64,000 nucleotides of DNA from Isurus oxyrinchus (GCA_026770705.1 JANJGN010000007.1:96472001-96536000), one strand, 5' to 3'; positions 1-20,400 are shown, numbered from the stretch's first letter. Notes: generated by a model not told the origin, from the sequence alone. Numbers and translations are program-made.

Positions 1-36
1 GGAGCTGAGTGACTTTGACTGACTTTTCACCGGAAC
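1..36 (-). CDS. 5' start of Ig V-domain exon of a second (paralogous) IgSF receptor gene; runs off the window
   Basis: Minus strand reads ttatctttccccatag|GTTCCGGTGAAAAGTCAGTCAAAGTCACTCAGCTCC. Phase-1 join to the leader gives (G)SGEKSVKVTQLP, a typical V-set A-strand (VTQxP). Confidence 0.75.
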
Positions 37-191
37 CTATGGGGAAAGATAACAATGATACCGTATTACAGGAGGGAAAACGCGAGGCTTAGGGGCTCAG
101 GCATTAACTGGAAAGGAGAATAAAACATGTATCACAAGAAAGTTAAATCAAAATGCGATTCATAGAGAAAGCAATGTATAATAGCAGATAC

Positions 192-246
192 CTGTGAAGA
201 TGATCCCCAGAATAGCGAGGCACTGAGTGACAACATTCGCCAGCAT
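192..246 (-). CDS. Signal-peptide (leader) exon of paralogous IgSF receptor, MLANVVTQCLAILGIIFT(G)
   Basis: 55-nt exon from ATG to CAG|GTATCT, phase 1. Same length and phase as the + gene leader, and 20/23 nt identical across the exon end and donor (CTGGGGATCA.CT.C.CAGGTAT). Confidence 0.8.
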
Positions 247-527
247 TCTGAACCAGTTGACCAGTCGGAGCGACAGACCATGAACTGGCTGATAGTTTGT
301 AAGGAGCCTGGGGAGGCGGAGAATAGAAAGCGTCACAATGAAGGCGTAAACATCCTGTCTTTGAGCTGAGAACATGTCATTTCTTTCCCTTTGGTGAGAT
401 TTGCTGAAACTGTATATCTGCCAGAAGAGGCCACAGCTCACAACTTGAGTTTTTTCTATTCAGCTGGTCCGACCTCACCCTCCTGCCTTGTGGAAAGCCT
501 GGGTGAAAAGCGTTCTGTGCATATAAT

Positions 528-615
528 TTCCCAGGAGTTCCCTGTTGGGGTGGTTCCCAGGAGTTCCCGGGTGGGCTGTTTCCCAGAAGTTCCATGTCGG
601 CAGTCTTTCGGGGAA
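528..615. promoter_or_regulatory. 26-bp-phased array of TTCCCAG(G/A)AGTTCC elements plus a TTCGGGGAA GAS site; candidate promoter/enhancer of the minus-strand gene
   Basis: Copies start at 528, 554 and 580, with TTCGGGGAA at 607. TTCCCAGAA (580) and TTCGGGGAA fit TTCN3GAA. GGGAACTCC on the minus strand is NF-kB-like. Lies about 280-370 bp upstream of the ATG at 246. Confidence 0.5.
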
Positions 616-1504
616 ACTGGGGTAATGGCTAATTTGGGCCGTTGCCAGTTTGTGCAGAGTTTGCGTTGATGGTCCGGCTAAGATAAGGCAGGAAATTGTG
701 AGAATTGCAGCAAAATGACCTTAAGTATCCTACATCATTTTAGACGACACAGGGGAAATGTTTAGAAGCGTAAAGTCGAAATTGTGGAAGAGTTGAAGCA
801 CATGACCCCTATATTTAGCGATATACGCCAGGTCTCTCGCTGGAGCATGAGACATTGTAGGAAACCCAACGACGGTGCAGCATGCTGTATGGTGATTCAT
901 GCTGTTTCTGTGTCACTTTCCAATTTGATCATTGCTAAAAGTAACCAGGTAGACTACCAATAACCATCAGGTCAAGCGTCTGTGATTGTATTACTAAAAT
1001 AATTTCAGCAATGCCGACCTTTTCATGTTTCATCCGTTACTGTGAATGTCTCTGCTGTTCCTCAGTAATCAGAGTCGAGAGCAGTTTGGGTGAAGAGTGG
1101 TTTTTCCTGCTGCAGAATTTAATGACTTGCAGATTCAAGCAACAGCGGCAGAGGCACCAAATCATTGTTTTCGCCATTGTGAAGAGGAAAGTTTACTAAA
1201 AAAAAACCTCGGGCATTTGTGCAGGAGAACAAAGAGGCGCCAGGTTCCTTGCTGCATTTATTTATCAAAGGCAAGGGCAGGAAGGGAGAAATGTTTGGGA
1301 GAGAACAACAGTGTTCAAAAGAGAAAGGAACACGGACAATAGAAGCTGTCCAGGACAGTCATTATATAAAATATCATCCGTTCCCACCAGTTGAAGTGTA
1401 GGAGGACAATAGCCTGGATTTTAATGTCGGGGAAAAAGAACGAGTCTCACAGTTCATTCGGCTTACAGTTGTCCACAGTTTTCGTGAGTTGCGCGTTACA
1501 AACG

Positions 1505-2015
1505 AACATACGAAATAGGAGCAGAAGTAGTCCATTCCGCCGATCGAGACTGCTCCGCCATTTAATAAAACCATGGCCGATCTGTTTGTGTTTCGAATTC
1601 CACATTCCCAATTACCCCCGATGACCTTTGATTCCCTTGCCTAACAGTAATCTACCTACCTCTGCCTTTAAAAATATTCAATAACCTTCATTAGCCTTCT
1701 TAATTACTTGTATCTACATGCTAACTTGTTGTGGCTCATGTACTAGGATCCCTCTGCACCTCAGAATTCTGCAGCCGTTGTCCATTTAAGAAATACTCTG
1801 CTTTCATATTCTTCCTGCCAAGGTGAACAACTTCACATTTTCCCACTTTATACTCTATCTGCCGGGTTTTTGCCCACTCACTCAATCTATCTATATCCAT
1901 CTGTATCTGATCGTATCCGCACAACATAATTTCCTCCCATCGTTGTGTCATCTGCAAACGTATCTAACATATCTTCACTCCGCTCATTTAAGTCAGTGAT
2001 ATAAACTGTATAAGG
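1505..2015 (-). mobile_element. CR1 LINE fragments (3' tail and RT C-terminus)
   Basis: ORF 1736-1957 (QIQMDIDRLSEWAKTRQIEYKVGKCEVVHLGRKN) is the CR1 RT C-terminal motif; a CR1 3' tail lies at about 1510-1690. Confidence 0.8.
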
Positions 2016-2419
2016 TGTTGCTGGAGATGCTTTAACATGTGCTGCCCTCTAATGGAGATTTGTGGTCTGTGTGAGCAGAATAAGCAAACGTGTGTCTCTT
2101 CAATCAATCTGACTGAAGTATCCTCACTGACCCAAGCTGCGCGACAATTTGACTCAGTTATGTCCGTTTTGTTTGGCTACCGCTTTACCCTTTGAGTTGT
2201 AGAATGCCACTACAACTGCAATACCCGTGCACAGTTGAGATGCAAAGCAAGTCGAAAGCCATCTTGATGCAGTGGATGTCTGCTAGGAGAATGCAGACCA
2301 GGGAGATCATGACATTCGGCAGTAGGCATCACAAACTTGCCGCCAACACTGGTATTTTGGAGCGCAACGGCCCAGCCAGCGCCCTATCTTAGGCATTATG
2401 CAGACAAACAGGCTTATAG

Positions 2420-2890
2420 CAGCATGTGGCCTTGTGGTGCAGCGGGTGATGTCCTTGGCAATAGTTCAGATCCAAGTCCCACTCCAGAACTTGATGTTCA
2501 ACGAAATGATCTAGAATATGGCCAGACTGGCCATCATCCAGCAGAATATTTCCAACAAATGCCAAGGGCATTGGGTAAAAGCAGGTGAGATTCCTGGTCA
2601 GCCACATGATGGGAAGAAAATCAAAGCCTTAACCATCATTATTGCCAGCTCCGAGTTAGAACATACATGTAAAATGCACGTTGTCATAACAAATCGGGCT
2701 CCTGGCGTGGTGTAGCAGTTGGCTCAGTTGGTTGGATGGCTGCTGTGGATCAGATTGGTCCCAGCAGTACAGGGTTCGATCCGTGCTGCCAGCTGACTTT
2801 CTGCCTTCCCCGTGATAGAGATCATGGCGTCGTGTGCTTGGTAGAGAACTGAAGAAGAAGGCAATATTTATAGGGATCATCAACTACTAA
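2420..2890 (+). mobile_element. Decayed tRNA-derived SINE remnants
   Basis: A-box/B-box-like heads (gtggtgcagcgggt...ccaagtcccactccaga; tggctcagttggt...gggttcgatcc) without a complete cloverleaf. Confidence 0.4.
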
Positions 2891-2899
2891 CTGATTAAT

Positions 2900-5800
2900 T
2901 GCTGGATGATTCTTTTCTGGCCGTTGCTACAATTCTACATGTTTCCATAATTGTTTCAAGCTTCAAGAGTCCAAATGGAGTGGCATGGCAGGTGCTTAAG
3001 TACTTAGGGCTGGGCTCAAGACTCCTGCACAACCAATTCCTCCCAGTCCTCCTCTTACGAGTAAAGAATGACTTGGAGAATGAGAAGACGCCACTGAGAG
3101 CATACTGCTAGAAACGGGAGGAGGGAGAAAATCTCTCGACAGAAGGTCATAGTTCCCCAAAGTGTTCAGGGAGTGCTTGTTTCTCTGTGAAAAACAGTGT
3201 AAGTGATATAGATGATTCACGAAGGAGTTCCCCACTGAAATGTGCCAAGTGTTGCCACCACAACTGCAAGATCAGAGGAGGGGAATTGCCACATTGGCAA
3301 TGGCTGAGGGTGGTGATAAATTTTGATGCATCTGTATCCTTCAAAGCTAGAGCTGGAGTTCTTAATAACTTTTTGCTGTACACAGTTGCATGTGTGAAGT
3401 CACTGAAGTTTTTATTTAAAGAGTGTCAATTTCATTTCAGAGGCAATCTGGCGGAGTGAGCACGAGGGTTTCCGACTTCCCTATGTCTATGCACGCACAT
3501 TGTTCAGAATTCCAGTCCCTCAACATTCAGTTCGTGCGGAACCTTAGGGAATACATCATATATATCAATGCTGGTATATTGATAGCAGTCATGATGCTTT
3601 CATTTTGTGGCAGTCTGCTGTGCCAGCTGTATTTCAGCCAGTAGGGGAAACCAAAGCATGGCTATTACCATGAACTATCTACTAGGCCATGGTTCAAGAC
3701 TCTGGTTCACAGCCCATGCACATTTTCATAACATGCATACAATGAGAACCATGCTGCGCAAGAAATGTGATAGGGTCACCACTCGTGTGCTTATGTAACA
3801 ATTCCATTGCTAGATTTATAGAGTTGCCTTGCAGTATTTAACTACGAATGACTCAATCTTCTTGGTAATATGCTGCGCAACTTTGCCATCTTGAAATGAC
3901 AGCCCTTGCCACCAATTATCAGACTAGTGGCTGACGAGCAAAATCACAGGGAGTGGAAGAAGGACGAGAAAGGAGAGCAAGAGAGGCAGCAATCTAGATA
4001 ACCATTTTCTCCCCATGCTTAACGTGAAGAACTTATTTCAATGCATTACCTATAATTTGAACCACAAATCCCCATTTATCACAGTTTCAAATTCCACATG
4101 GCGCATACTTCACTGAATGGCATATAATTCCCTTGGCCATAGCACAAACATAAAAGTCATCACAAAATACATATGTCAAACCGAATTTATAGATTAATTC
4201 ATGTCATAATGCACACAAACATAAGCCTAATCACTCTTCTGCGTTTCTCTAATGCCTGCCCTGTTAGTAACTTTGCCTGTGCTTCCAGCTTCAATGATAT
4301 CCCAATTGCTGCGCAAGGCTGGTGAAAGTTATTGATTTTGTCTGCAAGACACTGCAGATGGACGACCTTGAGCAGCTCTGAAGCTTGAAGACCCTACTTC
4401 AGATTGCTCCATCTAGGCATGGGTGCCAGAAGCCCTGGGCTAGCTGGCAGACAGGCAACAGCATGGTCACTGTCAGATTGGAAGGAACTGGAGGACGAAT
4501 GCTGCCATCCTGAAATAGAGTAGCAGGTTCTTGCTCGCTGGAGCCTGTCTCCGAGGACAATTCAATATTCCTAGTAATCTATTGGAGGAAATGTTTTTGC
4601 ACTGCTGCAATACCCTGCAAAGCCTTCCGTACTTTGATTGATGTCAGCAGTCTGACTCTGAGTCTAACCCTGAGGGTTAGCAAGCTAAGCTTGCTTGAGA
4701 ACAAAACAAAAATAAAAATACCTGGAAAAACTCAGCAGGAAGAGTCATACAGACTCGAAACGTTAACTGTGTTCCTCTCTACAGATGCTGCCAGACCTGC
4801 TGAGTTTTTCCAGGTATTTTTATTTTTGTTGCGGGTTTCCAGCATCTGCAGTTTTTTGTATTTTGCTTGAGAATAATCTCGGCGTACATGGCAGCAAATT
4901 GACATTGCATGACTTCAATCTAACCATCAGTGCAGAGGTTCTAGTGTTAGTGGAGACTGCTGATTTGTCAATGGAAGTTGTGACATCACCCAGCAAGCAA
5001 TGCATCATTTTTGGATCCATGACTATGCTGTTAGAGTTGACGCTACTTTCATGCTGGAAGGAATGAGCACCAAACTCTGCACAGCGCTGAGACAAGTTGA
5101 CACCAGAATCCTCCATGTTCCTTGACACTGATTGCATTCTACTTGGCGTCCTGGTACACCAAGCATTTCGTTGTGTATACCCACCAGCCTCCTTCTGTAG
5201 CCTGAACAATCAAAGTCTTCATTTGACTCCTCTACCGCTGATCGTGTATGTGATCTTAACATTCACTGAGCTGGTTCTTGTGCTATCCTTGCCTTCTGCC
5301 CTGGCTGTAGCCCATGCAAGCCCAGTATCTCACTGCAAGCAGATTCTGTCTCTAACCCATCCTCCAAGGCAAGCACGATGTCAATTTCCATGCTGGTGGC
5401 TGCCAGTGTGTAATCAAGCAAATGGTGCTGTGTTTTCATAATTACTATCTCATAGCTATTCCCCCATCGCATTGTCAGCTTGTATCTCCGAGGTATCTGA
5501 AAGGGAAAAGGCGCATAGACAAGGCTGTGCTGCGAGAAGGAACAGAAAGGTAAGTGTTACATGGTTACACCATCTGCAGCTTGTAAGATGGAGCAGATTG
5601 TGGGATGGGGGATGTCAGAAGGAGGGTCAGCATGATGTGCCATCATCTTCAAGACATTCAGTCCTGTACCCGATCCAGCCAGCATCATTTGCTCCACGGG
5701 CTTTACTGCATCATTCGCCCTCTTGTTAGTTCCTGGTGCCTTTGGTTTTGGACCACATTCACCTTCAAGACAAAGTGCGCCAATAAATACTGTGCAGTAT

Positions 5801-6400
5801 TGCTTAAATGATGCAGCTTGTAAAGGTTTTAAATATGGCTATGAGTCTTACAACAGTGCTAAGGGTGTGAGGATGAGGAGAAGCCTGTGCCTGGTAGGTA
5901 TAACTGCTGATTGGTAGAGACTTCTGGTGGGTGAGTGAAGTGGGCATAGTAATTGGAGAAATTACTGTGGTTAGTTTTGCAGTTGGTAGGACACGAAATT
6001 TGAAGCTGCATTCACGAACCTTAACCATTTAGGTAATGTCACCAAACTTCTCGCTGCATGAGATAGCAGGGCGCCTCTCTTCCACCCCACCTCCTCCAAC
6101 ACCTCCAGTACAACGTTGGAAAATGTGGGTGCCCGCTATCTCTCATGTCCAGCCATTCTTGTCTCTCTTCAAGATCAGTCTCAGCTCCCACTGGACTCCC
6201 AGCACCTGCTCCAGATGCGATGCATCTTCCCTCTGAAGTTAACTTAATGTCCTGCTGGTGGGTATCGATTTGGGCTCCCTGATGTGTGCTGTCAGTTAAC
6301 AGCACCATGAGATCGTACAAATCATGTAAAGGGACATGCAGCATGGAGATGGCGTGCTGCAAGCGTTATATCTGCTGAACGCTGGTTAATTACGTGTCAT
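2900..6400 (-). mobile_element. Highly decayed PIF/Harbinger transposon remnants (DDE nuclease and Myb/SANT-like pieces)
   Basis: Degenerate minus-strand peptides (CHATPFGLLK, GAHSFQHESS...CLLGD, SEKFGDIT) resemble Harbinger motifs; many frameshifts. Confidence 0.35.
4702..4862 (+). mobile_element. 161-bp hairpin mini-Penelope (3' end with inverted arm)
   Basis: aaaatacctggaaaaactcagcagg is inverted against cctgctgagtttttccaggtatttt. Flanked by 11-bp TSD ttgcttgagaa (4691-4701, 4863-4873). Confidence 0.75.
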
Positions 6401-6524
6401 AATTCCAATTGCCTTTTTTACGGCTATTTAATTTAGACCCAACAGAATCTACAAAACGAAGTATCAATTCGAATATTTAATTCCACGTAAAATCAGTTTG
6501 AGAAAATAAAATAAAAAGGATTGA

Positions 6525-9015
6525 AAGTGGGGTTCAAAACAGTCAGGTGGCATGTGCTGCGTGGTATCAAGTTCCTTGAGTGTTGTGGGAGCTGTACTCA
6601 TCCAGGCAAGTGGGGAGTATTCCAGCAAACTCCCGACTTGTGCCTTGTAGATGGTGGACAGACTCTGGGGAGTCAGGAGGTGAGATCATCACTACATTAT
6701 TCCCAGCCTTTGGCCATCTCTTGTAGTCAATGTATTGATGTGGCTGCTCCAGTTAAGTTTTTGGCCATTGGTAGCCCCAGGATATTGATGATGCAGATTC
6801 AATGATGTAATGAAGTTGAATGCCAAGAGGAGATGGTTAGATTCTCTCTTGCTCCAGATGGTCATCGCCTGGCACTTGTGTAGCACAAAAGATATTTGTT
6901 ACTTATTAGCCCAAGTGCGAATTTGTCCAGGTCATGCTTCATATGGATATGGATTGTTTCAATTTCAGAGGAGTCGCGAATAGCATTGAACATAGTGGAA
7001 TCATCCGTAAACGTCTATGCTTTTGACCTTATGATGGGAGGAAGGTCATTGATGAAGCAGCTGAAGACGCTTGAGCCTTGGACATTGCACTGGAGAACAT
7101 TGGCAGCTATGTCCTGGGACTGAGATGATTGGCCTCCAACAGCCACAACCATCTTCTTTTGTGCTAAGTATGGCTCCAACGAGAGGAGAGGCCCCCTCCC
7201 CCAACTCCCACTCTCTCTGATTCCTATTGAGTTCAATTTCCCTTGGGTTCTTGATGCCACACTCGGTCAAATGCTATCTTGATGTCAAGGGCAGTCACTC
7301 CCACTTCCCCTCTGGAATTCACCTCTTCTGTCCACATTGGGACCAAGGCTGCAATTATGTCAGGAGCTGAATGCCAGTGATGGAATTCCAAATAGGCTTT
7401 GAGTTATTACCGAGCAAGAGCCATGTGATCACACTGTATATTACACCGTCCATCACTTTGCTGATGATCAATGATGCATTTGTTCTGCATTTTGTGGAAA
7501 AAACGTAAATGGGAAATTTTTGCATATAGTGGACTGTTGTAGCTGTGCTGGATCAGCTTGGGTAGGGGCGTGGCTACTCCTGGAGCACCAGCCTTCAGTT
7601 CTGCTGTCGTAATGTTGTCAGTGCCTGTAGCTTTTGCTGTATCCATTGTCTTGTGGTGCTTCCAGGCATCACCTGGAGTGAATCAAATTGGCTGAAGACT
7701 GGTATCTGTGATGCTGGAGACCTGAGGGGAAGACCAGGTTGGATCATCCACTCAGCATTCCTGACTTCAGATGATTGCAAATGCTTCAGACTTGCTCTTT
7801 GAGTTGGCTCCCTCAACGTTGAAGATGTGGATACTTATGGAGCCCCTTCCTCTGGCTCTTTCTTTAATTGTCCACCACCATTCATGACTGGGTATGGCAT
7901 TACTGCAGAGATCTGACCTGATCTGTTGGTTGTGGGATTGCTTAGCTCTGTCTATCACTTGCTGCTTCTGCTGTTTGACGTGCATGTAGTCATGTGTTAT
8001 TACTTCACAAGGTTGACGCCTGGTGCTCATGGCATGTCGCCCTGCCCTCTTTATTGGATGGTACTTAGTGAATGAGGAATATGAAGGGCAACGAATTTAG
8101 GGATTGAGCTTGAATACCATTATGTGCACAGCGCTTCATGGATGCCCAGTCTTGAGCTGCTGTATCTGGTCTGAACCTATTGCATTTTGCATGGTGATAG
8201 TGCAACACAACACAATGAAGAGTTTCCTCAGTGGGAAGATGGGATTTTGTCTCCACAAGACTGTTTGGTGATCAATCCTTACAATAAAGTCATGGAAGGA
8301 TGCATCTGTGACAGGTAAATTGGTGAGGGCAAGGTCAAGTATGATATCCCTCTTTAAGGATCTATCAGCAGCTTCCGCAGCCCCAGGCAGATATATCCTT
8401 TAGGCCCCGGCCAGTTCAACCAGTAATAATGCTTCCGAGCCACTCTGGTGATGGGCATTCAAGTTCCTCCACACGGAGTACATTCTGTGCCCTTGCTACT
8501 CTCAATGCTTCTACCAAGTGGTATTCAACATTGAGCAGTGTTGGTTCATCAGCTAAGGGTGGGCGATAAATGGTGATCAGCAGAAGGTTTCCTCGCTCAT
8601 GTTTTATCTGATGCCGTGAAGCTTCATGGGGTCCAGTGTCAATATAGAGGACTTCCAGGGCAACTCCCTCCTGACTGCATACCACTGTGTTGCCACCTCT
8701 GGTGGGTCAGCCCCGCTAGTGGGAAAGAACAGACCCAGGGATGATGATGGTGGTGTCTGGGACATTGGCTGTAAAGTATGTTTTGATGAGTATGACTATG
8801 TCAGGCTATAGCTTGGCTAATTTGTGGGACAGTTCTCCCAATTTTGGCATATGTCCCAGTGGTTAGCAAAGAGGACATTGCAGTGTCAATGAATGCAATT
8901 GTTATTCTTGCTTCTGATACCTGGGTTGGTGCTGGGTGGTCCACTTTTGTAGTGGTTTGGTATACCTGAGTGACTTGCTGGGCCATTTCAGAAGGCAGTT
9001 ACAAGTCAACCACAT
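6525..9015 (-). mobile_element. Non-LTR retrotransposon of the CR1/L2 (Jockey) group, shark family here called LINE-B; EN and RT fragments
   Basis: Minus-strand ORFs with QKKMVVAVGGQSSQSQDIA...FSCFINDLP, KATGTDNI...APGVATPLPKL and GNLLLITIYRPP. Confidence 0.8.
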
Positions 9016-9310
9016 TCAAAAGCAATGGGTTGCATCTCAACAGCTCTGACAGCAATGTGCTCATGGAGATGTTGATTAGTGTGGTTGAGGGGGGCTGAAG
9101 ATAGCTTGGCAGGGGTATGAGTATCAGCATTTAAAACTGGAAAAGGGGAATAAGATAAAGCATAAAGGATTGCAGCTAGTGCTAGAGAAGGAAGTTATGC
9201 CATTTTAGATAGGAGTGGACTAGGAAGGACTACGAGGAATAAAAAGACATGTTTACAGTGTCTGCAGTTATGATCTCAATGGAGACTGGTAAAGCTTTTT
9301 TAGAATCCAA

Positions 9311-12300
9311 TGTCTCAGGTATTTACTAAAAGGGTGAAGCCACAAGGTAAATAGGTAAAATCAAAAGAATTTTACTGAACAGAATCAAAAATATGAATAC
9401 TGATAACGATACTCTAACTTAAATAGTCAGCTACATTAAATTTATTAAAAGTACAATGAACACAGTTACTTATACTCTAAATCAAACTTCTTATCTCAAC
9501 TCTCCTTCTACATGCATTTGACTTATATTGCCAATCACTCAGGTCAGAATTTGACGGATTAACTTCTTGGTCTAAGTAGTCATTCAAACACTCATGTAAT
9601 TACTGAGATTTCTTGGGCCTTCTACTTACTTCAGGCAATGTTTTCCCTTTAAATATCCTCCAGCTGTCTCACAGTTGTAAACACCCTTTCAAAGCACCAC
9701 TGGTGTCTTAAGCATAGCTACCTTGCATCAGAACTCTCCTGGTTCTAATGTTCTCTGGAGTCCTGTATCTATGAACTATTTCTATCGTTCTTCTCAGGTT
9801 GGCTATTACAGAAATCCAACCCATTGTTAGTAGAAACATTTTGTTTTCAAAGTTTTTTTTAAAAATTTCAGCCAGTACACACAGAATTTCAGCTGAATCC
9901 TGCTTGAAATAAATGTTCCTCTTGGCCAGCTTGTTCTAAACTAAACCCAATCTCATTGAACACAGAACAACACCTAGGGACATACTCACCCTCATAGTTA
10001 ACTTTGAATTGACCTTTTTTATTGTTTCTCTCTGAGGCAAGTTGGTCCCATGAGCATTTACTGGGAGAAAGGTGCTTTAGCTGAAATCTTTCAGAGAAAC
10101 ATAATTTTTGAAGGGGGTAATCATCCTAACATAAAACATCCTTATTTTCTCCAAAAGACCATTGGCCATCATAATGTATATAAATGGACAAAGCGTTGGC
10201 AATACGTTCAGTGAGCTACAAGCATGAAGTTGATGTTCTTCAGCTTTGACCTTCACAACACACCCTCGAACATCAGGTTTGGAACAAGAAAACTAGCACA
10301 CAGAGACCAAGGTTGCAGTTGGCTTTTAACCTGCCTTTTTGTGTATTCTTGGAAGGGGAAAGAACAAATGCCCATTTCACCAAGAAACTGTTTTCTGTCA
10401 ATTCACATCCTGTCCACAGTCTGGGATATAACGAACAGGAAATGGTTTCCACTGAGATGGTAATCAGCCTTCATTATCTCCACAACCACAAGAAATTATA
10501 GTTCAGTTTTTGAATTGCATCTGTTCCTTTGACGTGTCTCTGTCCAAAGCAGACCTTGAAAGCTTTTTAGGTGCGCCATTCTCTTCCCTGGACTAGTCAA
10601 GTCTAATTCTCATAGGGATTTTCCAGCAAGTGATCACTTTACAGTCTCTGTCAGTTTTTGTGTTTTCTTTTTTATCAAACACGTCTTACGTAAAAGTTCA
10701 ATATGTCCATAAGTAATTTGGGGCTATGATCTGTGGTCATGACACTTCCCCACACAATGAATTAAATGAGATTCATTCAACAAAGGTAGAATAAAATTAA
10801 ACATAATGTAACAAATACACACACATATTCATTCACTAAGGCTTGGTCACTGTTATCCCTTCAGTTCTAACCGAGTCTCTTTAAGTTCTGGACAGGGTAT
10901 CTGCAATCAAATTTGATTTCCCAGAAATGTGGGTGACTTTAAGATGGCATGGTTGGAGAAGCAAATTGTATCTTAACCATTTCCACAAAAGTTAACAGGT
11001 TGTAGCCAGTATAGACTGTGGTCTCTCTGTATCCATTTTGGACATATTTCTCAAAGTGTTTGAGAGCCAGTAATAAACTGAGCATTTCCTCCTCTACTGC
11101 GGAGTACCATTTTTGATGCTTGTTTACTTTTTTGGAGATTGGTCTCTCCACCTCTTAATCATCTTCCTGGAGGAGGACAGCCCCTACCCTGATGCCACTC
11201 ACATCAATGGCTACTTTAGGTGCTTGATTAAAGTATGGAGCTGCAAGCATAGAGGATGAATGATCTCAGGGATGTCGCCAGTGTGTAGCAACCATCTCAT
11301 CACTATAAACTCATACTCACAAGCCTATCACACATCCACTGGCATTTCACTCATTGCCAGCTCAGATGACATCACAACTCACTCTCTCACACATACCTTT
11401 ACATCTCTATCAATTCAACATGATGTCCGCACCGCCCCCCACCCCGCGCAACCCCCCCCCCCCCACAACAAAATAACGCAATTGGCTAAACCCACCACTA
11501 CATGTTTCATCAGGCATCAGGCTTTGAAAGCTGGCTGGGGCATTTCGCAGTCTACACGCCATGACTCAACACTGGTATAACCCATCGGGAGTTAAGGAGG
11601 AGATTTCCTTCACACAGGCAGTCAAGGGAATATGCCAGTATCCATTGAGTAGATCTATCTTTGTAATGTAGGCTGATTTACATACATTTTCAATGCCATC
11701 TTCCAGGTGGGGTATCAAGTAGGAGTCAGCTCGGGACACTGCATTAATGCTTCGGTAGTCAATGCAGAATCTTGTGAAGCCATCCGGCTTGGGCATGAGC
11801 ACAACTGGCGAGCTCCAGATGCTGTTGCTAGGCTATATTAGTTGGTGCTCTAGTTCAATGTGGGCCTCACCTACACCTCCCTCCAATTAACCCCCACTGC
11901 TATCCTTATCCTCAATGTCAGTGACATTGAGACAGACCATTACCTGCTTGTCCCCTTCTCGGCTATGATATTGCTTTATCATGTCGACATGATAAAACCT
12001 TTACTTTTTCCAGGATCTGGGGCCTCAGTTAGACAGCTTACTTCCCTGAGCTTCTTTACTACTCTGGACAGGCCAGTGAACCAAGCTTTTAAGGGTTCAC
12101 CTGTTATTGGTAGTCATGGACAACTCCAGGCACTTTCTCCTACAGCTGTTCTGTCTTCCTGACCTCAATGGGCTTCTCTGAGACCAACGCAGATACAATT
12201 ACCTTTAATCCCACGAGGTCATTGCCGAGAAGAATGTCAACCCGGTCCACAGGGAAACTGGGGACGACTCCCATGGTCACATGGTTCCCACACAAGATCG

Positions 12301-13945
12301 CACTCCAGATGCACTCAGGAGGTCGTGTACCCTCCTCAATCCCCACCAACACTTTGGCACTTATGGAACTCTCTGGTGAAAAGGTCATGCCTTTTCCCAG
12401 CAGTAGAGTTTGGCTGGCTCCTGTATCTGTCACTTTCACTACAGCCTTACTCGCCTCACCCTGGGAAAAAATGGCCAATGTGGCCACCCTTCCTTTGGAT
12501 CCAAAGTCCTTGCCACTCTCAGGGATTTGTTCAACCTCATCTGCACTCTCAGGAGTGCCTCTATAGGGATTTGCAGCCGCAGTCAGAGCCATAGTCTAGT
12601 CTGCAATGGTCTCTGACTGACCCCCATTCTCTACATGTATGTGCTTTGATTAATCCCAATGGTTTTTCCCAAAACCTCCAGCAGTTGGCCCAGACCCTAC
12701 ATTTCAGCAGTTAAAACACAGGCTTCTAGGCCTCACCTTTCATCTCAGCACAACCCTTTCTGTCCCGAAGAGGGCCCCCAGCAGTTCCCTCTATCTCATG
12801 GGTGCTCACATTCCTATCACTCTCTCCACCTCTATCCTTTCGAGTTGGTTGGGGGTGACTAGGGGAGGGTCTCTTCTGGAACAAGGGTTTGTGGATCAGC
12901 TCATAATCATCAGCCAGTATGGCAATCTGCCTGCCCCCTGTTATCCTCTGATCCTCCAGGTGTGTTCTTATTGGAAAGGGTATGGAGTTCTTAAACTCCT
13001 CAAAGAGAATTATTTCACTGAGATTTTTTTAAGTGGCTTCTGTTTTAAGTGCCTGCACATGCTGGTCAAAATCAAGTTGCTTAAGCCTTTCAAATTCCAG
13101 GTACATCTGGTCAGACCTTTTCCTGAGGGTAGGGAATTTCTGATGAGATGCCTCTGGCAATAACTGGTATGCACTTAAAACAGCCCTTTTTACTGCCTCA
13201 TAGTCAGTGACACTTTTCTCAGGCAATAGGGAGTAAATTAGATGAGTTTTCCCTGAAGGTTTACTCTGCCATAGCAGGGACAGATGTTGGACTGGCCACT
13301 TTAACTGATATGCTAACCCCACGAAAGTGATAAAGAAGGCATCTACCTCTGCTTCATCAAACTTCCAGATCAAATGAACAAACTTGATTGCCTGAGACCT
13401 TAAGTCTGAGCTGGTGGTGTCTTCAGGGGACACAATAAGCTTCCTTGCCCCTAGCTCAACTATTTTAATTTAATCCCCTTTCCTTCTCTCTGTCCTGAAA
13501 TTCACTCCCTTCTTTCCATGTCCTTTCCTGTCTTTCATCTTTCTCTTTTCCTTTCTTTTTATCATTCCTGAAATTCTAATTTCTGCTGCTCAAATTTTAA
13601 TCTTTCTCCTGCTACTCCATCCATTTCATTGACCATAATTGGCCATTGGCCACCCCTTTTAAAATTTTGGCAATATTCTAACCCTAAATCATTTAACTGT
13701 GCACAGGACAGAACTTTTAAATCCTCAAAAGTATCTTCCCCTAATTATCCCCGAAAAGCACTGGCATCAAATGTCGACATTTCTACACATTCATATTCTC
13801 TCTTTACCAGCATAACACAGTCACAAAAGTATTTTTGCTGTTTTTAGAAATTGGTTTCAAAGGAACAATTTACTTTCTCTACTCTAATCCTTTTGTTTAC
13901 TCTGTGGGAACAATTCCGGTACTGAACCCTTAATTTGTTACGACC
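9311..13945 (-). mobile_element. Decayed Gmr1-like Gypsy LTR retrotransposon (SCAN-like gag, protease, RT, RNaseH, 3' LTR)
   Basis: gag FDEAEVDAFF...KWP...DYEAVKRAVLSAYQLLPE (13029-13433); protease DTGASQTLL (12140-12592); RT PKPDGFTRFCIDYR...KIDLLNGYWHIPL (11566-11802); RNaseH YSAVEEEMLSLLLALKHFEKYV (10939-11151). PPT-like gtggggaag|TGTCA at about 10744; probable LTR about 9311-10744. Confidence 0.8.
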
Positions 13946-14494
13946 AGTCCCCGGGTGACTTCCTATAGGGCTCTGTAAGAATGCAAAATACATTATATGA
14001 AAACAAGTTAATTCTTTACTTGCTCTGAGCCAATTCATCCAAAAGGTGAATTCAAACAAATTGCTTGACAAATAGAAGAATTTAAGAGAGGAAGTGAGGA
14101 GCAAAGTTATGCTGGTAAAGAGAGAATATGAAAATAGCATGGCAGTTAACATCAAAGTGCTCCCAACAATCTTCTACCATGTAAATCTCAAGCAGCTAGG
14201 AAGAGTTGATGTGGGGCTGATGAGGGACAAAGTGGGTTATGCATGTGTAAGACAATAATATATAATGATTATGTTTCATTGGTGTTTATCGAGGAAGAGA
14301 ATGTTGCAAACTATTGGCAGAAATGAAAATGAGAAGATAATGAATGGTGTGAAAATTAATAGGTGGGATGTACTGGAAAGGTTGGCTTTGTTTCCAGTAG
14401 ACTCATCACCTGGTTCCTGATGGCTTACAGCTTAAACTGCAGGAGCAAGTTCTCCAGTCTGGCCAACTGCCAGCCCATCAGTCTACTCTCATCT

Positions 14495-14790
14495 TTCTTT
14501 CTTTATGTCATGGCATGTAGGCATTGCTGACATTTGTTGCTCATGCCTAATTGCATTTGAACTGAGTAGCTTCTCAGCCCATTTGAGAGGGCAGTTAAGA
14601 GTTAACCACATTGCTGTGGGTTTGGAGTCACATGTAGGCCAGAGCAGGTAAGGAGTGCAGATTTCCTTCCCTAAAGGACATTAGTGGACCAGATGGGTTT
14701 TTATAAACTGATGACAGTTGCCAAGGCGACCATCACTAAAACTGTTTCTATTCCAGATTTATTGATTGAATTGAATTAATTGAAAATGTT
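14495..14790 (-). mobile_element. tRNA-derived SINE sharing its 3' tail with LINE-B
   Basis: Reverse complement of the aaacccatctgg...cctttagggaaggaaatctgc...ccacagcaatg core also present at 43878-44100. Confidence 0.7.
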
Positions 14791-15399
14791 TCTATGCACA
14801 GCAAGGTCGAAAAAAAAACAGAACAAATAATTTAGATAATGGACAAAAAAAAATCAGTGGATTGATGAACCAGAACTGTTTTAAAACACCGATTATGAGC
14901 AGAATTCACTGCCCGAAAGGCGGCACAATCGACTTCAATCGTGAATTTGGAAAAGGAAACATTTGCAGAACGAAGGTGCAAAAGCAGAGCAGTGTCAATA
15001 ATTGGATAGCTTTTTTGAAAGTGCTGACACCCGCATGATGGGCCGAATGGTCTTCTCCTGTGTTGTATGATTCTCCTGAGTTCCCAGCTGTGGAGAGTGC
15101 TTTCCCTCCCCTCGTAATTCTGTGAGAGATCCAATTGAGCTTTCAGCCTATCCTACAACTACTTGCAGAACTGACGGATCTGCAGATGTGGCCGCGGGAT
15201 CCGTGGGAAGGTATCTTGGCAAACAGCTCCGACGCGGAAAATTGGTGGAAATAAATCTTATCACAGACATTTTAGGTAAACTAAAGTTTTGTCACGTTGA
15301 GAAATGACTGCGGAACCAGGACAAATTAATATCCAGAAAAAAGAGCCTGATCTGTGAGCTATTACTTAGAACCGCACTGGGCTCGGAGCAAGTAAATAA

Positions 15400-15775
15400 G
15401 TAACTTGTATTAAGATATAATGTATTTTATATTCTTACGGCGTCCCATAGTCTGTGTGGCTGAATAAGTAGGTTTGAAGTATGTCAACTGTTGTAATGTA
15501 GGGACAGCAGAAGACAATTAGATTAATGATCAACTACTTTGTGAGCTTTTTCTGTAAATGGCCAAGACATCGGTAGAACGCCATTGCTCTTCCGAGTATC
15601 TTGGACATTTTAAGTCCACGTGAAAGGGAAGACAGAGCCGCCATTTGAGCGTCTCCGCCAGTACAGCGCTCCGACAGTAATGATCTGGAGCGTCAGCCCG
15701 GATTATGTAATATCTCTGGAGGGGGACTTGAACCCCAAACCTTGTGGCACAGGCGGAAGTGTTATCAATCATCCA
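15400..15775 (-). mobile_element. DeuSINE-like (SacSINE1/AmnSINE1-type) element
   Basis: Minus strand shows a tRNA-like head (ggttcaagtccccctccagag), a Deu-domain-like core and an L2-like tail (ctacattacaacagttgacatacttcaaa). Assigned from recalled consensus. Confidence 0.6.
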
Positions 15776-16599
15776 AGTCTTAAGTGTGAAATAAATAAAT
15801 TTAGCCAGTGAGACACAGTCCTGTTATGAACCTGAGTTTGGATTGTGTCCCACATTAAGAGAGAAAGGGATTGAAGGATATACAGTTAGGGTTCGATAAA
15901 GTAAACTGGGATCAGGTTGGTGGAGAGCATTACAATCGACATTAACCAATTAAACCGTGAGGCCGACTCTTCATGTACAGCATATTCCATGTAAAAGTCA
16001 AATCTAGGCCACATTAATTGCTGGTTATCCAACATATCAAATGGAAACACCCGCTATAGTCGCGCAAACAGTATCATTTGTTTAATGGAAGCGTTGGTCG
16101 AGCAGCTAATTCGAAATGATCAAACGGATGTGTTATTCGACACATCGACAAATAGTTACCATGCAGGGTTGCGCACGCAATTCTCAGGCTTCAAGCATAT
16201 TGTACTAAGAGGTTAATTGTTAGGACACTTGCTCTTCGATAGCACACATGCCACCTTTTCTATTTATATAATTGGTTGCAATGGGACTAAGTCTATAATG
16301 ACCGGTTTAAATAGTTTGAAAAGTCAAGACTGTTCATAAGCTTGCAGCCACAGCAGATATGTAAACATAAATTCGTTTTTTAAAAATTGTGAAACAGTAT
16401 TTATTCGCCAATAGCCCCTTGTAAGCATCTATTCCGCATTTATCTTGCTAAGAGGAAACCTTGCTGTAATGCCTTTCTCGAATTATTTGTCATTTATGCT
16501 AACAGCTTACATTAATACAGCGCATTTAATATTAAAAAATGTTCCATTAGACTTCACAGGGAGGTATTCAAAATGATCTGAGGAAGACAATGAGGTGTA

Positions 16600-16990
16600 A
16601 TGTTGATTGTGGGCGCTAGTATTCAACCGAACAGTCGAGGTCAACCGTCCTTTACATATCTCTCAGGATGGAGGTGAAGACCATAGAGAGACACACGGGT
16701 GAGAGCGGCCAGCTCTTTGATTCACATCTCACTCGGTTTCCATTCCCATTGAGCTCAACATTGAGCTTCAGTCATTAAACGTTTCTTCCAGGGCGCGCTC
16801 CCACTTTATTCACTTGTTCCTCTGATCTGATTTTATTTCTTTCTCCTGCCCTTTTATTCTGATGCTGTTTAAAAGTTGCTCATTGTTTCTCTACTACTGA
16901 CGGAGTTTTATGACCAAAACGGTAACTCATTCGATATCTCGCTCGCTGTTGATGCTGGCCTTCCTGCATTTTCTGGATTTTTCTTTCTGA
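16600..16990 (+). mobile_element. Old Penelope 3' remnant just upstream of the receptor gene
   Basis: ctcaacattgagcttcag and ctgacggag...gaccaaaacggtaac...gatgctggcc resemble the Penelope ends at 58480-58980. Confidence 0.4.
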
Positions 16991-17381
16991 GATATGAGTT
17001 CACAGCATTATCGTGATTGGTCCGAGAGATGTCGCTGCCCAGTGCCCGTGAGTAACTCCCTATCTGGTTTAATCAACATTTTTAAGCGGTGGTCATTGAC
17101 CATCACGTAAAGAAGTTAAACTCCAAACTTCCTATTCCCAGAGAATATTTTCTGTCACAATTAACCTGCGCACAGGGTCTCGCTGTGACCTGGATTTGAA
17201 GGAACAGTAATAACATTCTGAGCACTTCAAGGTGACGCAGAGCGCTCAGCTCCTGGCATGCAGTTTGCATAATAGAACTCATTCATTGGCTCTGCCATTT
17301 CAGGCGGATGACTTCGGTTTACAAGCTACTGCCAGAGCTGTGTGCTTCCTCGCAATAAGCGGTGACTGTGTTTCCTTCAAC

Positions 17382-17436
17382 ATGTTTGTCGCGGATGTGC
17401 TTCAACTCATATGCGTGCTGGGGATCACCTGCGCAG
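17382..17436 (+). CDS. Exon 1: signal peptide MFVADVLQLICVLGITCA(G)
   Basis: caacATG start, hydrophobic 18 aa, CAG|GTAT donor, phase 1. Confidence 0.85.
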
Positions 17437-20400
17437 GTATTTTCTATTGTTTCTTTTCCCGCTCTCACTCTCCTCTCTCACCGTCTATTATTTTCCTCGC
17501 GCATTTCAGCTTCGTGTCTTATGTATCTTTCTGTTTTCTGCTAGTTATTATTCGAGCTCAGTTCCAAGTCTCCCAAGCTCCTAAAAGTACGAGCGCCCTC
17601 GTAGGCTCAAACGTCACCGTCTATTGCACTTTCCCTATTTTTCAAGATAACTCAGAAGTGGAAGTTTATTGGTGGAAACTTGGTGAAAGTGAATTTCTGC
17701 AAATGAGCTCCGACAATAGGAACATATTTGTCCTTTTTAAACAAGGAGGAGCCTCCTTTCATCTCCTGAATATCAGTGCCCGGGATTCCGGGGTGTATTA
17801 CTGCGGAGTCAAAACGCTGGAGAGCAGCATAGTCAATGGAACGGGCTCAACAATCAAAGTATCTGGTAAGTGATACTGGGGGAGGAAAGCAAACTCACAC
17901 ATCCGATGCTTTAAAATAATTATAGCTGCTGAATATTAGCTCAAAGATATACCAGGGCAACTGTTCAACTGCGCAGAATTCACTCTCCATTAGAAATTAT
18001 GCTACATATTCTTTCCATTGAAGTTAATTTAAGGGAAAATCGGCCATGGAATATTATGGGAGTTTAAGTTCAAAATAATTACAATAAATACTTATATTTA
18101 CCTCTCGTTGTGGAAACATCCGGTTACGTGTGATCATAACGCGTCGCTCATTCTGGACACCAGTGTTAACACAAATGCGGCAGGTTGAAAATCTGTCCCC
18201 CATTTCAAAATGAACAGATTCATCATGCCTATGATATTTTTTAATAAGTGGAATGTTTGTCTAATATCCGGACTAGCCATTAGCAGCTGATTATTATTGT
18301 TTCTTTTTAAAATACCGATATTATCCTTAGTTGCGTTGCATATGATTTGTTAAAATTGTTTTTTTTTGTTTCTTTCACACATCAAGAACATGAAGCGTAA
18401 ATTTTAAAATATTTTACAGTGCGAACTGGTCGGACAAATGTATTGTGTACTCTCTAAGTACAGATTAATGTCCTTTCCATTTTATTCTGCTCCGCTGCTG
18501 CTCTGCGTTGGCACAATAAAAGGTGAAATTAAAATAATTACAATGGTGTTAATTTATTTTGTTGATTGTTTGAAACAATGTGAATTCGCGTGGTCAAACA
18601 AAAAAACTATTTGGCCCGGCACGAAATAAAAAACGAAATAATCTTCTGTTGAAGGGTCACGAGGACTCGAAATGTCAACTGTGCTCTTCTCCGCCGATGC
18701 TGCCAGACTTGCTGAGTTTTTCCAGGTATTTCTGTTTCTGTTTTTGTTTTGAATCTTTAACATACCTTCTGTTGAACACCTAAATTTAAACTATTTACCC
18801 TCTCAAAATGTACAACTGCTCCACATTGTAAAAGCTGATACTTCTCTCCCAACACCACTAATCTGTAACCAACAACAGAAAAACAGGTGAAATTGGATAG
18901 CCTGCGATCAGCTCCTGCGACAATGCACCCGTCCCGCAATCAGACACAAATGTTCACCTAAACCCACCTGAGATTGGGCTCAATAACATCTGTAGGTAAC
19001 TATTGGATTGACAGGGATAGCTATCTCCACACATGAGGGTAACGTCTGTTGTCAGTTCCCAATCTGAAAAAAAAGCGATCCGCTCTGTAGCAAAGGCTCT
19101 GACTATTTTCACAATATTTCAAAGCTATAGAAAGTATTTCTGCGGTCACGCGTTATCTCCTTATTTGACCAAGTATTTAGAGTTTCATACAGGAACGTAT
19201 TTGCTTTTTTGCAATCCAACACGTTCACTATTTTACTGCGATAATATCTGGCTATTTTATACTCGTTAGTGTTTGCTGTTTTATGCTGTGACAGATTGAC
19301 AATATGCGGCAACATATTGGAGAATTGGTACTGGAACAAATTAGTTATTCAATTCTGAAACATATTATTTTGCAATGCATCATATTCGTTACTTTGCACT
19401 GTGGAATGTTTCTTAGTTTATAATTCAACACATTCTCTACTTAACCCAGCAATGTATTTGCTATTTTACGTGCAATATATATGTTGTTTTATAAGGCATT
19501 AAATTTACTGTTGCCTTTTGAAACATGTTTGCGATTTAAAGAAACACATTTTCATGTTTATTTTGCAACAATTTAATATTTTATATGGTTAAAGTATTTA
19601 TTATATCATCCTGTAGCATTTTTACCATTTTAGACTAACATGTTGTGCAATGCCACAAACCAGTTAGTAATTCATGTTGCACCACACTTACTGTTTCATT
19701 CTGAAACATATTTATTATTTAATACTGACAGTTCATTTTATATCATATTATAATGCTGAATATATGAGATGTATACCGTAACGTAGATGGAAAGTGTTAA
19801 CAGCTGCCTTTAAAGTGTAGGATATTTAACACGTCATATAAAACATTTGCTATTAATATTGTAACAGGTTTGTTATTTCTTCAGGTTATACAGAAGGGAA
19901 GTGTATGGAAACATTGATTATGGTTTATAAAGAAACAAAATGCCGATTTTGAAAATTGTAACAGAATTGTTCCCAATCTGTCAAAATATACTAATATGAT
20001 ATACTAGTTAAATTTGAACAGTCATTTATGACAATTCATACTGATATGATTTTATGATGTGTAGTTAAAATTCTTCGAAGGTAAACTTCACATGAACAGA
20101 ATTATCTTGTTTTTATGTAATGAGTAAAATATCGCAGTGATTATTCAATCCTATTTAAGGGCCCGAATAAAGTGAAGACAATTTGTGCGCTCAGCAACAA
20201 AATAACCCAAATTCTCGATCTTACCTGATTGTTTTTTTTTTCTTCTTACAGTTCCCCCAACTCCACTGCGGATTTTTGGCAAGGTACCTGAACCAAACTC
20301 CTCTGGTCTGAATCTTGTGTGCGAAACGGATGAGTTTTACCCGGAGGCGCTCAATCTCACTTGGTGCAAAAATGGGATTGAGATTATAACCGACATAGGG

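What the first reader, a model, noticed from the sequence alone, without database searches (positions are those of the whole stretch)
1..17436. Head-to-head paralog at the window edge, suggesting a receptor cluster
Seen: a minus-strand 55-nt leader (246-192) with the same length, phase and 3' sequence as the + gene leader. A 155-nt intron follows, then a V exon start (KSVKVTQLP) at 36-1. The ORF track hides this. The two ATGs are about 17.1 kb apart, divergent, and separated mostly by transposons. Inference: a multigene VJ(-C1) family, possibly paired activating/inhibitory receptors as in KIR, LILR and NITR clusters.
Basis: partly seen in the sequence, partly recalled or inferred. Interest (0 to 1): 0.8.

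Follow-up and report, generated by a model that had tools for sequence, protein, structure and literature searches.

The report
Second shark VJ-C1 receptor gene start
The left edge of the window holds the true first exon and first 36 bases of a second, oppositely oriented shark immune-receptor gene; it is an old, distant cousin of its neighbour rather than its matched partner, in a gene family this scan has met many times.

Summary
On the minus strand there is a 55-nt phase-1 leader exon (246-192), a 155-nt GT..AG intron, and the first 36 nt of a V exon (36-1). Its ATG lies 17,136 bases from the + gene's ATG, and the two genes point away from each other.

Both pieces match, in register, the N-termini of annotated shark and ray proteins of one clade ("C") of the cartilaginous-fish SIRP-like germline VJ-C1 family. 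The leader matches at residues 1-18 (11-14 of 18 identical) and the V start at residues 20-30 (7-9 of 11).

The + gene belongs to a different, deeply separated clade ("A"). Its V domain is about 80% identical to clade A and about 34% to clade C. The two genes are therefore old paralogs in one multigene family, not recent copies and not a matched pair.

- **+ gene:** it has an activating-type membrane span (R-x16-D, then a stop).
- **Clade C:** full-length members carry uncharged spans and ITIM/ITSM tails.
- **Minus gene:** its body lies outside the window and could not be read.
- **Whole family:** the activating span recurs in at least five clades beside inhibitory relatives. Activating/inhibitory pairing is real at family level, within clades.

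No RNA support was found. This scan has already reported the family, including head-to-head pairs, on other DNA of this genome. This is a new member of a known kind.

The parts
192..246 (-). Exon 1 (signal-peptide leader, 55 nt, phase 1) of the minus-strand clade-C VJ-C1 gene; ATG at 246-244
   Evidence: Read. tblastn gives 9 hits, best E 8e-4. 11-14 of 18 residues are identical to residues 1-18 of P0015, P0016, P0033, P0035, P0036, P0039 and P0042. No differences in a closely related species.
37..191 (-). Intron 1 of the minus gene (155 nt, GT at 191-190, pyrimidine tract, AG at 38-37)
   Evidence: Read. Homologous proteins have exactly one residue between the leader match and the V-start match, as the split codon predicts. 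Three of the 16-17 differences from the related species fall here.
1..36 (-). First 36 nt of the VJ exon of the minus gene (G|SGEKSVKVTQL plus 1 base); the rest lies left of the window
   Evidence: Read. 7-9 of 11 residues are identical to residues 20-30 of clade-C proteins, against 5 of 11 or fewer for most proteins outside clade C; the exception is chimaera P0020 at 7 of 11.
247..17381 (.). 17.1-kb spacer between the two divergent genes; holds no further family exon
   Evidence: tblastn with the window's own V and C1 exons, and then with all 52 family proteins, finds no other family exon. A tail HMM finds nothing. No long internal repeats.
10942..13433 (-). Decayed LTR-retroelement coding remnants (gag-like ORF, protease with a DTGA motif, RT, RNase H in that order on the minus strand)
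   Evidence: Pfam RT_RNaseH 33.3 bits and RVT_1 26.7 bits (below its cut-off). ORF list and translations.
7033..7465 (-). LINE-type reverse-transcriptase fragments, repeated elsewhere in the window; a similar piece lies at 1775-1909
   Evidence: Matches to the transposon-derived false N-terminus of gene model P0022. Segments within 6562-7652 match one to three other places in the window.
17382..17436 (+). Leader exon (55 nt, phase 1) of the + strand clade-A gene
   Evidence: Read. Aligns with the leader of P0022.
17545..17865 (+). Germline-joined VJ exon of the + gene (J motif NGTGSTIKVS in the same exon)
   Evidence: Pfam V-set E 4.5e-9. 82% identical by BLASTP to P0001; 81% to both P0001 and P0022 by blastp. 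Clade A has 99% SH-aLRT support.
20252..20560 (+). C1-set exon of the + gene
   Evidence: Pfam C1-set E 3.1e-11. Matches Ig constant domains and SIRP d2/d3 in the PDB. 69-72% identical to P0022 and P0001.
20981..21085 (+). Membrane-span exon of the + gene: VPFNRSVMVVRFVTSILVLLMLTIIVVDYF, then TAG at 21070-21072 (activating-type R-x16-D)
   Evidence: Read. tblastn to the spans of P0022 and P0025. The same motif is found in P0022, P0025, P0074, P0087 and P0098.

Best explanation
Window 246-192 and 36-1 (minus strand) are exon 1 and the start of the VJ exon of a second gene of the cartilaginous-fish SIRP-like, non-rearranging VJ-C1 receptor family. The rest of that gene lies left of the window. 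It belongs to clade C, an old lineage shared by sharks and rays. The + gene 17.1 kb away belongs to clade A. The pair is therefore two long-separated paralogs lying back to back in a large birth-and-death gene cluster. It is not a recent duplicate pair and not a matched activating/inhibitory couple.

Shown: the exon structure, the clade of each gene, and the activating-type span (Arg, 16 residues, Asp, then stop) of the + gene.

Inferred from clade-C relatives: the minus gene encodes V-C1, an uncharged membrane span and a tail with ITIM (LTYAAV-like) and ITSM-like (TEYAQL) motifs. Such a tail would recruit SH2 phosphatases after tyrosine phosphorylation.

Inferred by analogy with SIRP-beta and other Arg/Lys-span receptors: the + gene signals through an ITAM adaptor that carries an acidic residue in its own span.

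From the family tree, the + gene's natural inhibitory counterpart would be a clade-A gene with a tail, like P0001, P0002 or P0003. No such gene lies in this window.
For: - Sequence read directly.
- Leader and V start match clade C in register: residues 1-18, one split-codon residue, residues 20-30. Scores exceed all 100 shuffles and exceed nearly every protein outside clade C; chimaera P0020 equals clade C at the V start (tblastn).
- In the V tree, the + gene lies in clade A (99% SH-aLRT). In the 43-row tree clade C is separate (98%); in the 90-row tree its support is 90-94%.
- The + V exon is 75-80% identical to clade A and 29-39% to clade C.
- Nine of 18 clade-C proteins have a canonical ITIM plus a TxYxx[LIV] motif, and none has the Arg/acidic span.
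- The activating span R-x16-[DE]-[HY] occurs in six sequences, needing 6 changes of span type on the V tree, in at least five clades.
- No ITIM tail exon and no second V or C1 exon lies anywhere in the 64 kb.
- In a species about 2.3% diverged, the 700 bases are collinear with no indels. None of the 16 differences shared by both contigs falls in the 95 exon or splice positions.
Against: - Only 91 coding bases of the minus gene are visible. Its V body, C1, membrane span and tail were not read, so intactness and an inhibitory tail are inference.
- No RNA contig covers 1-700 in the two small putative RNA runs available.
- Zero differences in the exons is not significant (p about 0.09).
- Earlier reports of this scan say many copies of this family in this genome are dead.
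- Several clade-C database models are truncated or lack motifs.
Confidence: 0.75

Rival explanations
1. Matched paired receptors. The two neighbours are functional counterparts, one activating and one inhibitory, that see the same ligand, as in KIR, LILR or SIRP-alpha/beta.
For: The + gene has an Arg-bearing span and no tail. Clade-C relatives of the minus gene have ITIM/ITSM tails. An unchecked first-stage note places an ITIM/ITSM tail 11-14.6 kb left of the window.
Against: Paired receptors share near-identical ectodomains. Here the visible parts differ: leader 6 of 18, V start 2 of 11. The clades are about 34% identical in V and are separated by well-supported branches. Within the family, activating forms sit next to inhibitory forms of their own clade.
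Confidence: 0.08
2. Dead 5' fragment. The leader and V start are the remains of a clade-C gene whose body is decayed, truncated or lost.
For: Earlier follow-up reports of this scan describe most copies in other clusters of this genome as dead (not checked here). No RNA contigs were found. Several clade-C models in other sharks are truncated.
Against: The ATG has an A at -3, and the frame, GT donor, pyrimidine tract and AG acceptor are all intact. A related species shows no change in these positions. A first-stage note reports a tail with tyrosine motifs at the expected distance (unchecked).
Confidence: 0.2
3. Two-chain receptor. The clade-A chain (+) and the clade-C chain (-) are co-expressed from a divergent locus and pair into one heterodimer, as antigen-receptor chains do.
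For: The two genes are head-to-head, and the scan has noted other head-to-head pairs of two VJ-C1 subfamilies in this genome (unchecked). Both chains have the VJ-C1 build of antigen-receptor chains.
Against: The ATGs are 17.1 kb apart with retroelement debris between them, so there is no compact shared promoter. No membrane-proximal cysteine lies in the + gene's short stalk. No expression or pairing data exist. In Heptranchias the clade-A gene's accession number lies two away from that of a clade-B gene. That is a weak hint against a fixed A-C pairing.
Confidence: 0.05
4. Chance open frame with chance splice signals.
For: Only 91 coding bases are visible. Signal peptides are compositionally alike.
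Against: Two separate pieces match one clade at the right residue numbers and with the right one-residue spacing, above all shuffles. The tblastn E-value is 8e-4.
Confidence: 0.01

Closest known systems
SIRP family (SIRP-alpha, -beta, -gamma; PTPNS1/SHPS-1)
   Same: A V domain followed by a C1-set domain on a type I membrane protein. Paired forms exist: an ITIM tail that recruits SHP-1/2, against a short-tailed form with a basic span residue that binds an ITAM adaptor (PMC12975943). Bat and bird SIRPs were the only non-cartilaginous-fish proteins among the 20 short profile hits I named, at E about 1e-40. SIRP d2/d3 is among the best solved matches to the C1 exon. NCBI names many family members 'tyrosine-protein phosphatase non-receptor type substrate 1-like'.
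   Different: SIRPs have two C1 domains; here there is one. The tail motifs and the R-x16-[DE]-[HY] span are the family's own. SIRP-beta uses a Lys with DAP12 (from general knowledge). No ligand is known, and there is no evidence for CD47.
[quoted passage not shown] 2019, J Immunol 202:1992, cited in PMC10751288)
   Same: By title and citation: non-rearranging IgSF genes with a VJ-type V, found as two genes in chicken. From my memory, unverified: V-C-TM-tail proteins from a tightly linked gene pair. Earlier reports of this scan call the shark family 'probably PRARP'.
   Different: Not tested. Neither the paper nor any PRARP sequence could be obtained, and none of the 20 hits I named carries that label.
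UrIg / UrIg2 (non-rearranging shark antigen-receptor-like genes; PMC12227049)
   Same: Cartilaginous-fish genes with a germline-joined V followed by a C1 domain.
   Different: UrIg2 is a long multi-domain molecule (V-C1-C2-C3 and on to C9) that forms disulfide-linked homodimers. The genes here are V-C1-TM only. That paper does not mention ITIM, SIRP or PRARP.
KIR, LILR and NITR paired-receptor clusters
   Same: Multigene birth-and-death clusters that mix ITIM-tailed forms with charged-span, short-tailed forms.
   Different: KIR and LILR ectodomains are not V plus C1-set, and NITRs are teleost V or V/I-type receptors (general knowledge). Here the second domain is C1-set. The two neighbours in this window do not share an ectodomain type closely.
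Ig light chains and TCR chains
   Same: VJ-C1 build, with the J-like motif G-x-G-T/S-x-L/I-x-V. NCBI's automatic names include 'immunoglobulin lambda-1 light chain-like'.
   Different: V and J are one uninterrupted exon in the germline, so no rearrangement is needed. The genes have their own membrane span and signalling tail.

Membership tests
Cartilaginous-fish SIRP-like germline VJ-C1 receptor family (no agreed name) | Short phase-1 leader exon encoding a family-type signal peptide, followed by a split codon and the V exon | tested here: met
   Both genes have 55-nt phase-1 leaders. The minus leader matches residues 1-18 of clade-C proteins, 11-14 of 18.
Cartilaginous-fish SIRP-like germline VJ-C1 receptor family (no agreed name) | V-set domain with the family landmarks Q..P, G.N.T..C, WW, D.G.Y.C and the J motif NG.GS.L.V in the same exon | tested here: inconclusive
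   The + gene has all of them. The minus gene shows only the first 11 residues (SGEKSVKVTQL), which fit clade C. The rest is outside the window.
Cartilaginous-fish SIRP-like germline VJ-C1 receptor family (no agreed name) | One C1-set domain starting PPTPL, with FYP, W and Y.C.VSH | tested here: inconclusive
   Met for the + gene. Not visible for the minus gene.
Cartilaginous-fish SIRP-like germline VJ-C1 receptor family (no agreed name) | Either an uncharged span plus an ITIM/ITSM-type tail, or the R-x16-[DE]-[HY] span with a very short tail | tested here: inconclusive
   The + gene has the second type. The minus gene cannot be read here; 9 of 18 clade-C relatives have the first type and none has the second.
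SIRP (alpha/beta/gamma) | Ectodomain of one V-set and two C1-set domains (PMC12975943) | tested here: not met
   The + gene has one C1 exon only, and there is no other C1 in the window. Family proteins of about 330 aa have one C1.
SIRP (alpha/beta/gamma) | Sequence kinship to SIRP V and C1 domains | tested here: met
   The family profile hits bat and bird SIRPs at E about 1e-40. The C1 exon hits SIRP-alpha and -gamma structures at E 8e-14 to 5e-13. This shows relatedness, not orthology.
SIRP (alpha/beta/gamma) | Binding of CD47 | not testable with these tools
   Needs a binding assay.
PRARP | Orthology to chicken PRARPA/PRARPB sequences | not testable with these tools
   The paper and its sequences are not held. 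There is only a citation in PMC10751288.
Rearranging antigen receptors (Ig, TCR) | Separate V and J segments flanked by recombination signals | tested here: not met
   The V framework and the J motif are contiguous in exon 17545-17865.
Matched activating/inhibitory receptor pair (KIR, LILR, SIRP-alpha/beta type) | The two partners share a closely similar ligand-binding ectodomain | tested here: not met
   As far as visible: leader 6 of 18, V start 2 of 11. Clade A against clade C is 29-39% identical in V.

The most novel reading that the evidence does not exclude
The back-to-back clade-A chain (Arg/Asp span, no tail) and clade-C chain (ITIM/ITSM tail) are the two chains of one non-rearranging heterodimeric receptor. 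That would be a living example of a two-chain VJ-C1 receptor of the kind that may have preceded rearranging antigen receptors.
Probability: 0.05. Interest if true: 0.75.

Novelty: new member of a known kind. Interest (0 to 1): 0.33.

Why it matters
The result adds one more locus to a large, little-studied shark family of ready-joined antibody-like receptors.

Two points go beyond a mere count. First, neighbours in these clusters can belong to lineages that split before sharks and rays did, so adjacency alone is not evidence of functional pairing. Second, the activating-type membrane span (Arg, 16 residues, Asp/Glu, His/Tyr) is conserved from chimaera to sharks and to P0087, which sits in the ray clade, and it occurs in several clades beside inhibitory relatives. 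That suggests an activating/inhibitory receptor system with V-C1 ectodomains is as old as the cartilaginous fishes.

I found no paper in the held library that describes this family.

Tried and rejected
I could not read the genomic neighbourhood of the Heptranchias or Heterodontus orthologs, nor fetch DNA left of the window.
- **RNA check.** The only putative RNA runs of the source species are small and hold no contig on 1-700. This says nothing either way.
- **Related-species test.** Zero of the 16 shared differences fall in exon or splice positions; p is about 0.09, not significant.
- **PRARP and UrIg papers.** Fu et al. 2019 and the 2023 UrIg paper are not held. The UrIg2 paper does not deal with this family. 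Word searches for PRARP mostly returned unrelated uses of the acronym.
- **Big profile search**. Its top 150 are filled with cartilaginous-fish members and giant Ig-repeat proteins. The 20 short hits I named gave only SIRPs as outside relatives, so the link to bony-vertebrate families stays open.
- **Accession-number adjacency as a stand-in for synteny**. The neighbour of Heterodontus P0022 by number is P0170, a V-less C1-TM-ITIM model that is not clearly clade C. I give this no weight.
- **A 14-base exact match** between minus-strand 803-790 and the + leader. The context shows no leader-like frame, so it is chance.
- **Protein atlas** gave only generic SIRP-like and V-C1 clusters.
- **My first automatic span/tail labels** misfiled some proteins, so I redid them with a stricter rule.
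- **Weak resemblance after the C1 exon.** The read-through (20561-20637) weakly resembles the stalk of inhibitory P0001. It is too weak to interpret.
- **Joined models.** I left out the joined spliced model throughout. Searches were exon by exon. One search used the contiguous, unspliced in-frame window stretch 17232-17870 only to set the length range, with words and scoring restricted to the V exon.


Full report
**What is in the sequence**

Reading the minus strand of bases 1-600 shows the following:
- an ATG at 246-244 with an A at -3;
- an open 55-nt exon to base 192 (MLANVVTQCLAILGIIFT plus one base);
- GT at 191-190, a pyrimidine-rich tract and AG at 38-37, giving an intron of 155 nt;
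- then 36 bases that read, after the split codon (Gly), SGEKSVKVTQL plus one further base.

The + gene's leader (17382-17436) is also 55 nt and phase 1. The two ATGs are 17,136 bases apart and divergent.

The leaders share 31 of 55 bases. The similarity is concentrated in a block of 26 of 31 bases across the 3' end and donor site. No third copy of that block exists in the window, even allowing three mismatches. The only caveats are that the last residue quoted (P) rests on one base, and that 'mostly transposons' is only partly demonstrable.

**Is it a real gene start?**

The window belongs to a cartilaginous fish. The + gene's V exon is 82% identical by BLASTP to a Heptranchias perlo protein, and 76-77% identical to Scyliorhinus torazame and Mustelus asterias proteins. 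Searches with two of the hits brought in about 50 family proteins from sharks, rays and a chimaera.

Several of them begin almost exactly like the minus-strand feature. Examples are the Heterodontus proteins P0015/P0016 (MLASVVLQCLSVLGIIFTACGETSVKVNQYP), P0033, P0035 and P0036/P0042 (MLANNVLQYLSILGIIFTGYSETSVKVTQLP), Scyliorhinus canicula P0039 and Mobula P0040.

I compared the two exon pieces separately. The leader matches residues 1-18 of these proteins with 11-14 of 18 identities. The V start matches residues 20-30 with 7-9 of 11. Exactly one residue lies between the two matches, which is what the split codon predicts.

The best scores were 72 for the leader and 39 for the V start. These exceed the best of 100 shuffles taken over all proteins (41 and 33). 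Most proteins outside clade C reach at most 9 of 18 and 5 of 11; the exception is chimaera P0020, with 7 of 11 at the V start. tblastn of the family against the whole window hits 246-193 nine times (best E 8e-4). I take the exon structure as established by homology.

**RNA and a related species**

The run search found the source sample and many DNA runs of a second, closely related organism. It found only four small runs guessed to be RNA, and none of those holds the stretch. Laying two of them gave nothing, which is no evidence of silence.

Contigs of the related organism cover 1-700 in one piece with 16-17 substitutions and no indels. None of the substitutions falls in the 91 exon bases or the four splice-site bases. 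That fits constraint but is not significant (p about 0.09).

**What family, and how are the two genes related?**

The + gene has four exons:
- a leader;
- a V-set exon carrying its own J motif (NGTGSTIKVS);
- a C1-set exon;
- a membrane-span exon.

The family alignment shows the invariant landmarks: Cys, WW, D.G.Y.C, NG.G, PPTPL, FYP and Y.C.VSH. It also shows a conserved tail (…NKLTYAAL…STEYAQL…).

A V-domain tree places the + gene's V exon, with 99% SH-aLRT support, in a clade with P0001, P0002, P0003 and P0022. I call this clade A. The proteins that match the minus gene form a separate clade, which I call C. Clade C has 98% support in the 43-row tree, where it contains both sharks and rays and lies on the other side of the tree's main split. 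In the 90-row tree its support is 90-94%.

The + V exon is 75-80% identical to clade A and 29-39% to clade C. The two neighbours are therefore paralogs within one family, but old ones. Their split predates the shark-ray divergence. The + gene's own leader is only 6 of 18 identical to the minus leader.

**Activating and inhibitory forms**

The + gene's span exon reads VPFNRSVMVVRFVTSILVLLMLTIIVVDYF and then TAG. This gives an Arg and, 17 positions later, an Asp.

The same R-x16-[DE]-[HY] span with a very short tail occurs in:
- Heterodontus P0022 (clade A);
- Callorhinchus P0025;
- Carcharodon P0074;
- Chiloscyllium punctatum P0098;
- P0087, which groups with the ray clade.

On the V tree these six rows need six changes of span type. 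They lie in at least five clades, each beside ITIM-tailed relatives. The other clade-A proteins (P0001-P0003) have uncharged spans and long tails with tyrosine motifs.

The stop after the span is thus the normal end of an activating-type form, not a recent amputation of an inhibitory tail. A tail HMM finds no family tail exon anywhere in the 64 kb (best E 2.4).

Clade C shows the opposite picture. Nine of 18 proteins have a canonical ITIM plus a TxYxx[LIV] motif, and none has the Arg/acidic span. By homology the minus gene is predicted to be inhibitory. A first-stage note of this scan places a tail with ITIM/ITSM motifs 11-14.6 kb left of the window.

Paired activating/inhibitory receptors such as SIRP-alpha/beta share homologous extracellular domains (PMC12975943). 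That pattern exists in this family, but within clades. The natural partner of the + gene would be a clade-A gene with a tail, and none lies in this window. The two neighbours here have different ectodomain lineages, so they are better described as adjacent members of a large cluster.

A two-chain heterodimer reading cannot be excluded, but nothing here supports it. The starts are 17 kb apart. Between them lie retroelement remnants (RNase H, RT, a protease with DTGA, and a gag-like ORF at about 10.9-13.4 kb on the minus strand) and LINE-type RT pieces.

**Comparison with known families**

With the family profile, 239 library proteins reach E<=1e-30. Of the 20 short hits I named, 18 are cartilaginous-fish proteins carrying contradictory automatic names: SIRP-like, lambda light chain-like, tapasin-related, NCR3LG1-like, MHC class II beta-like. 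The other two are true SIRPs of a bat and of corvid birds, at E about 1e-40.

SIRP d2/d3 is among the best solved matches to the C1 exon, after immunoglobulin constant domains. The family is thus SIRP-like, but it fails the SIRP definition of two C1 domains.

PRARP is a chicken-described family of non-rearranging VJ genes, cited in PMC10751288. Earlier reports of this scan suggest the shark family belongs to it. I could not test that, because neither the paper nor the sequences are available. UrIg and UrIg2 are much longer multi-domain molecules. I found no paper in the held library that describes this shark family.

**Method notes**

I did not search, align or fold any joined spliced model. 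Every search used single exons or database proteins. One search used the contiguous unspliced in-frame stretch 17232-17870 only to set the length range, with scoring confined to the V exon.

**Verdict**

The feature is the genuine 5' end of a clade-C VJ-C1 receptor gene lying back to back with an activating-type clade-A gene. The scan has already reported this family, including head-to-head pairs, on other DNA of the same genome. This is therefore one more member of a known kind. Its modest added value is the clade assignment and the evidence for an old, recurrent activating span.

Noticed in passing
window 20981-21072 and proteins P0022, P0025, P0074, P0087, P0098: The activating-type span R-x16-[DE]-[HY] (for example RFILSVLVLLLLTIIIMDH) keeps its spacing from a chimaera through several sharks to P0087, which sits in the ray clade. 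It occurs in at least five V-domain clades, which suggests an old shared exon.
   Followed up: partly
window 17322-17381: The stretch just upstream of the + gene's ATG translates in frame to a sequence similar to the false N-terminal extension of Heterodontus model P0022 (…ARAVCFLAISGDCVSFNM against …ARALYFLPASGKRPLLNM). The 5' UTR therefore seems conserved between distant sharks. The N-terminus of P0022 is a transposon-plus-UTR annotation artefact.
   Followed up: partly
window 20354-20368: The + gene's C1 domain has Cys where the family has a near-invariant Tyr (LTWCKNG against TWYK[ND]G). P0070 shares this, so there may be an unpaired cysteine.
   Followed up: no
window 10942-13433 (minus strand): A decayed LTR-retroelement coding region with gag-like, protease (DTGA), RT and RNase H parts in order. 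No flanking long repeats were found within 1-17500.
   Followed up: partly
window 20561-20637: Read-through after the C1 donor (…GNWAFTLEYSVNGK*ISSELVI*SGC) weakly resembles the stalk of inhibitory clade-A protein P0001 (FTVQFSKLGDNNTSKHLLISGC). It may be a relic of an inhibitory-type stalk, or chance.
   Followed up: no
window 1-700: Many public runs of a second organism hold this stretch at about 97.7% identity with no indels, so a closely related species is well sampled. Its contigs run 105-248 bases past the window's left end, but their letters were not shown.
   Followed up: partly
proteins P0009, P0014, P0022, P0043, P0048 (public gene models): Several public models of this family carry transposon-derived or otherwise spurious N-terminal extensions. 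These cause false matches to LINE fragments all over the window.
   Followed up: partly
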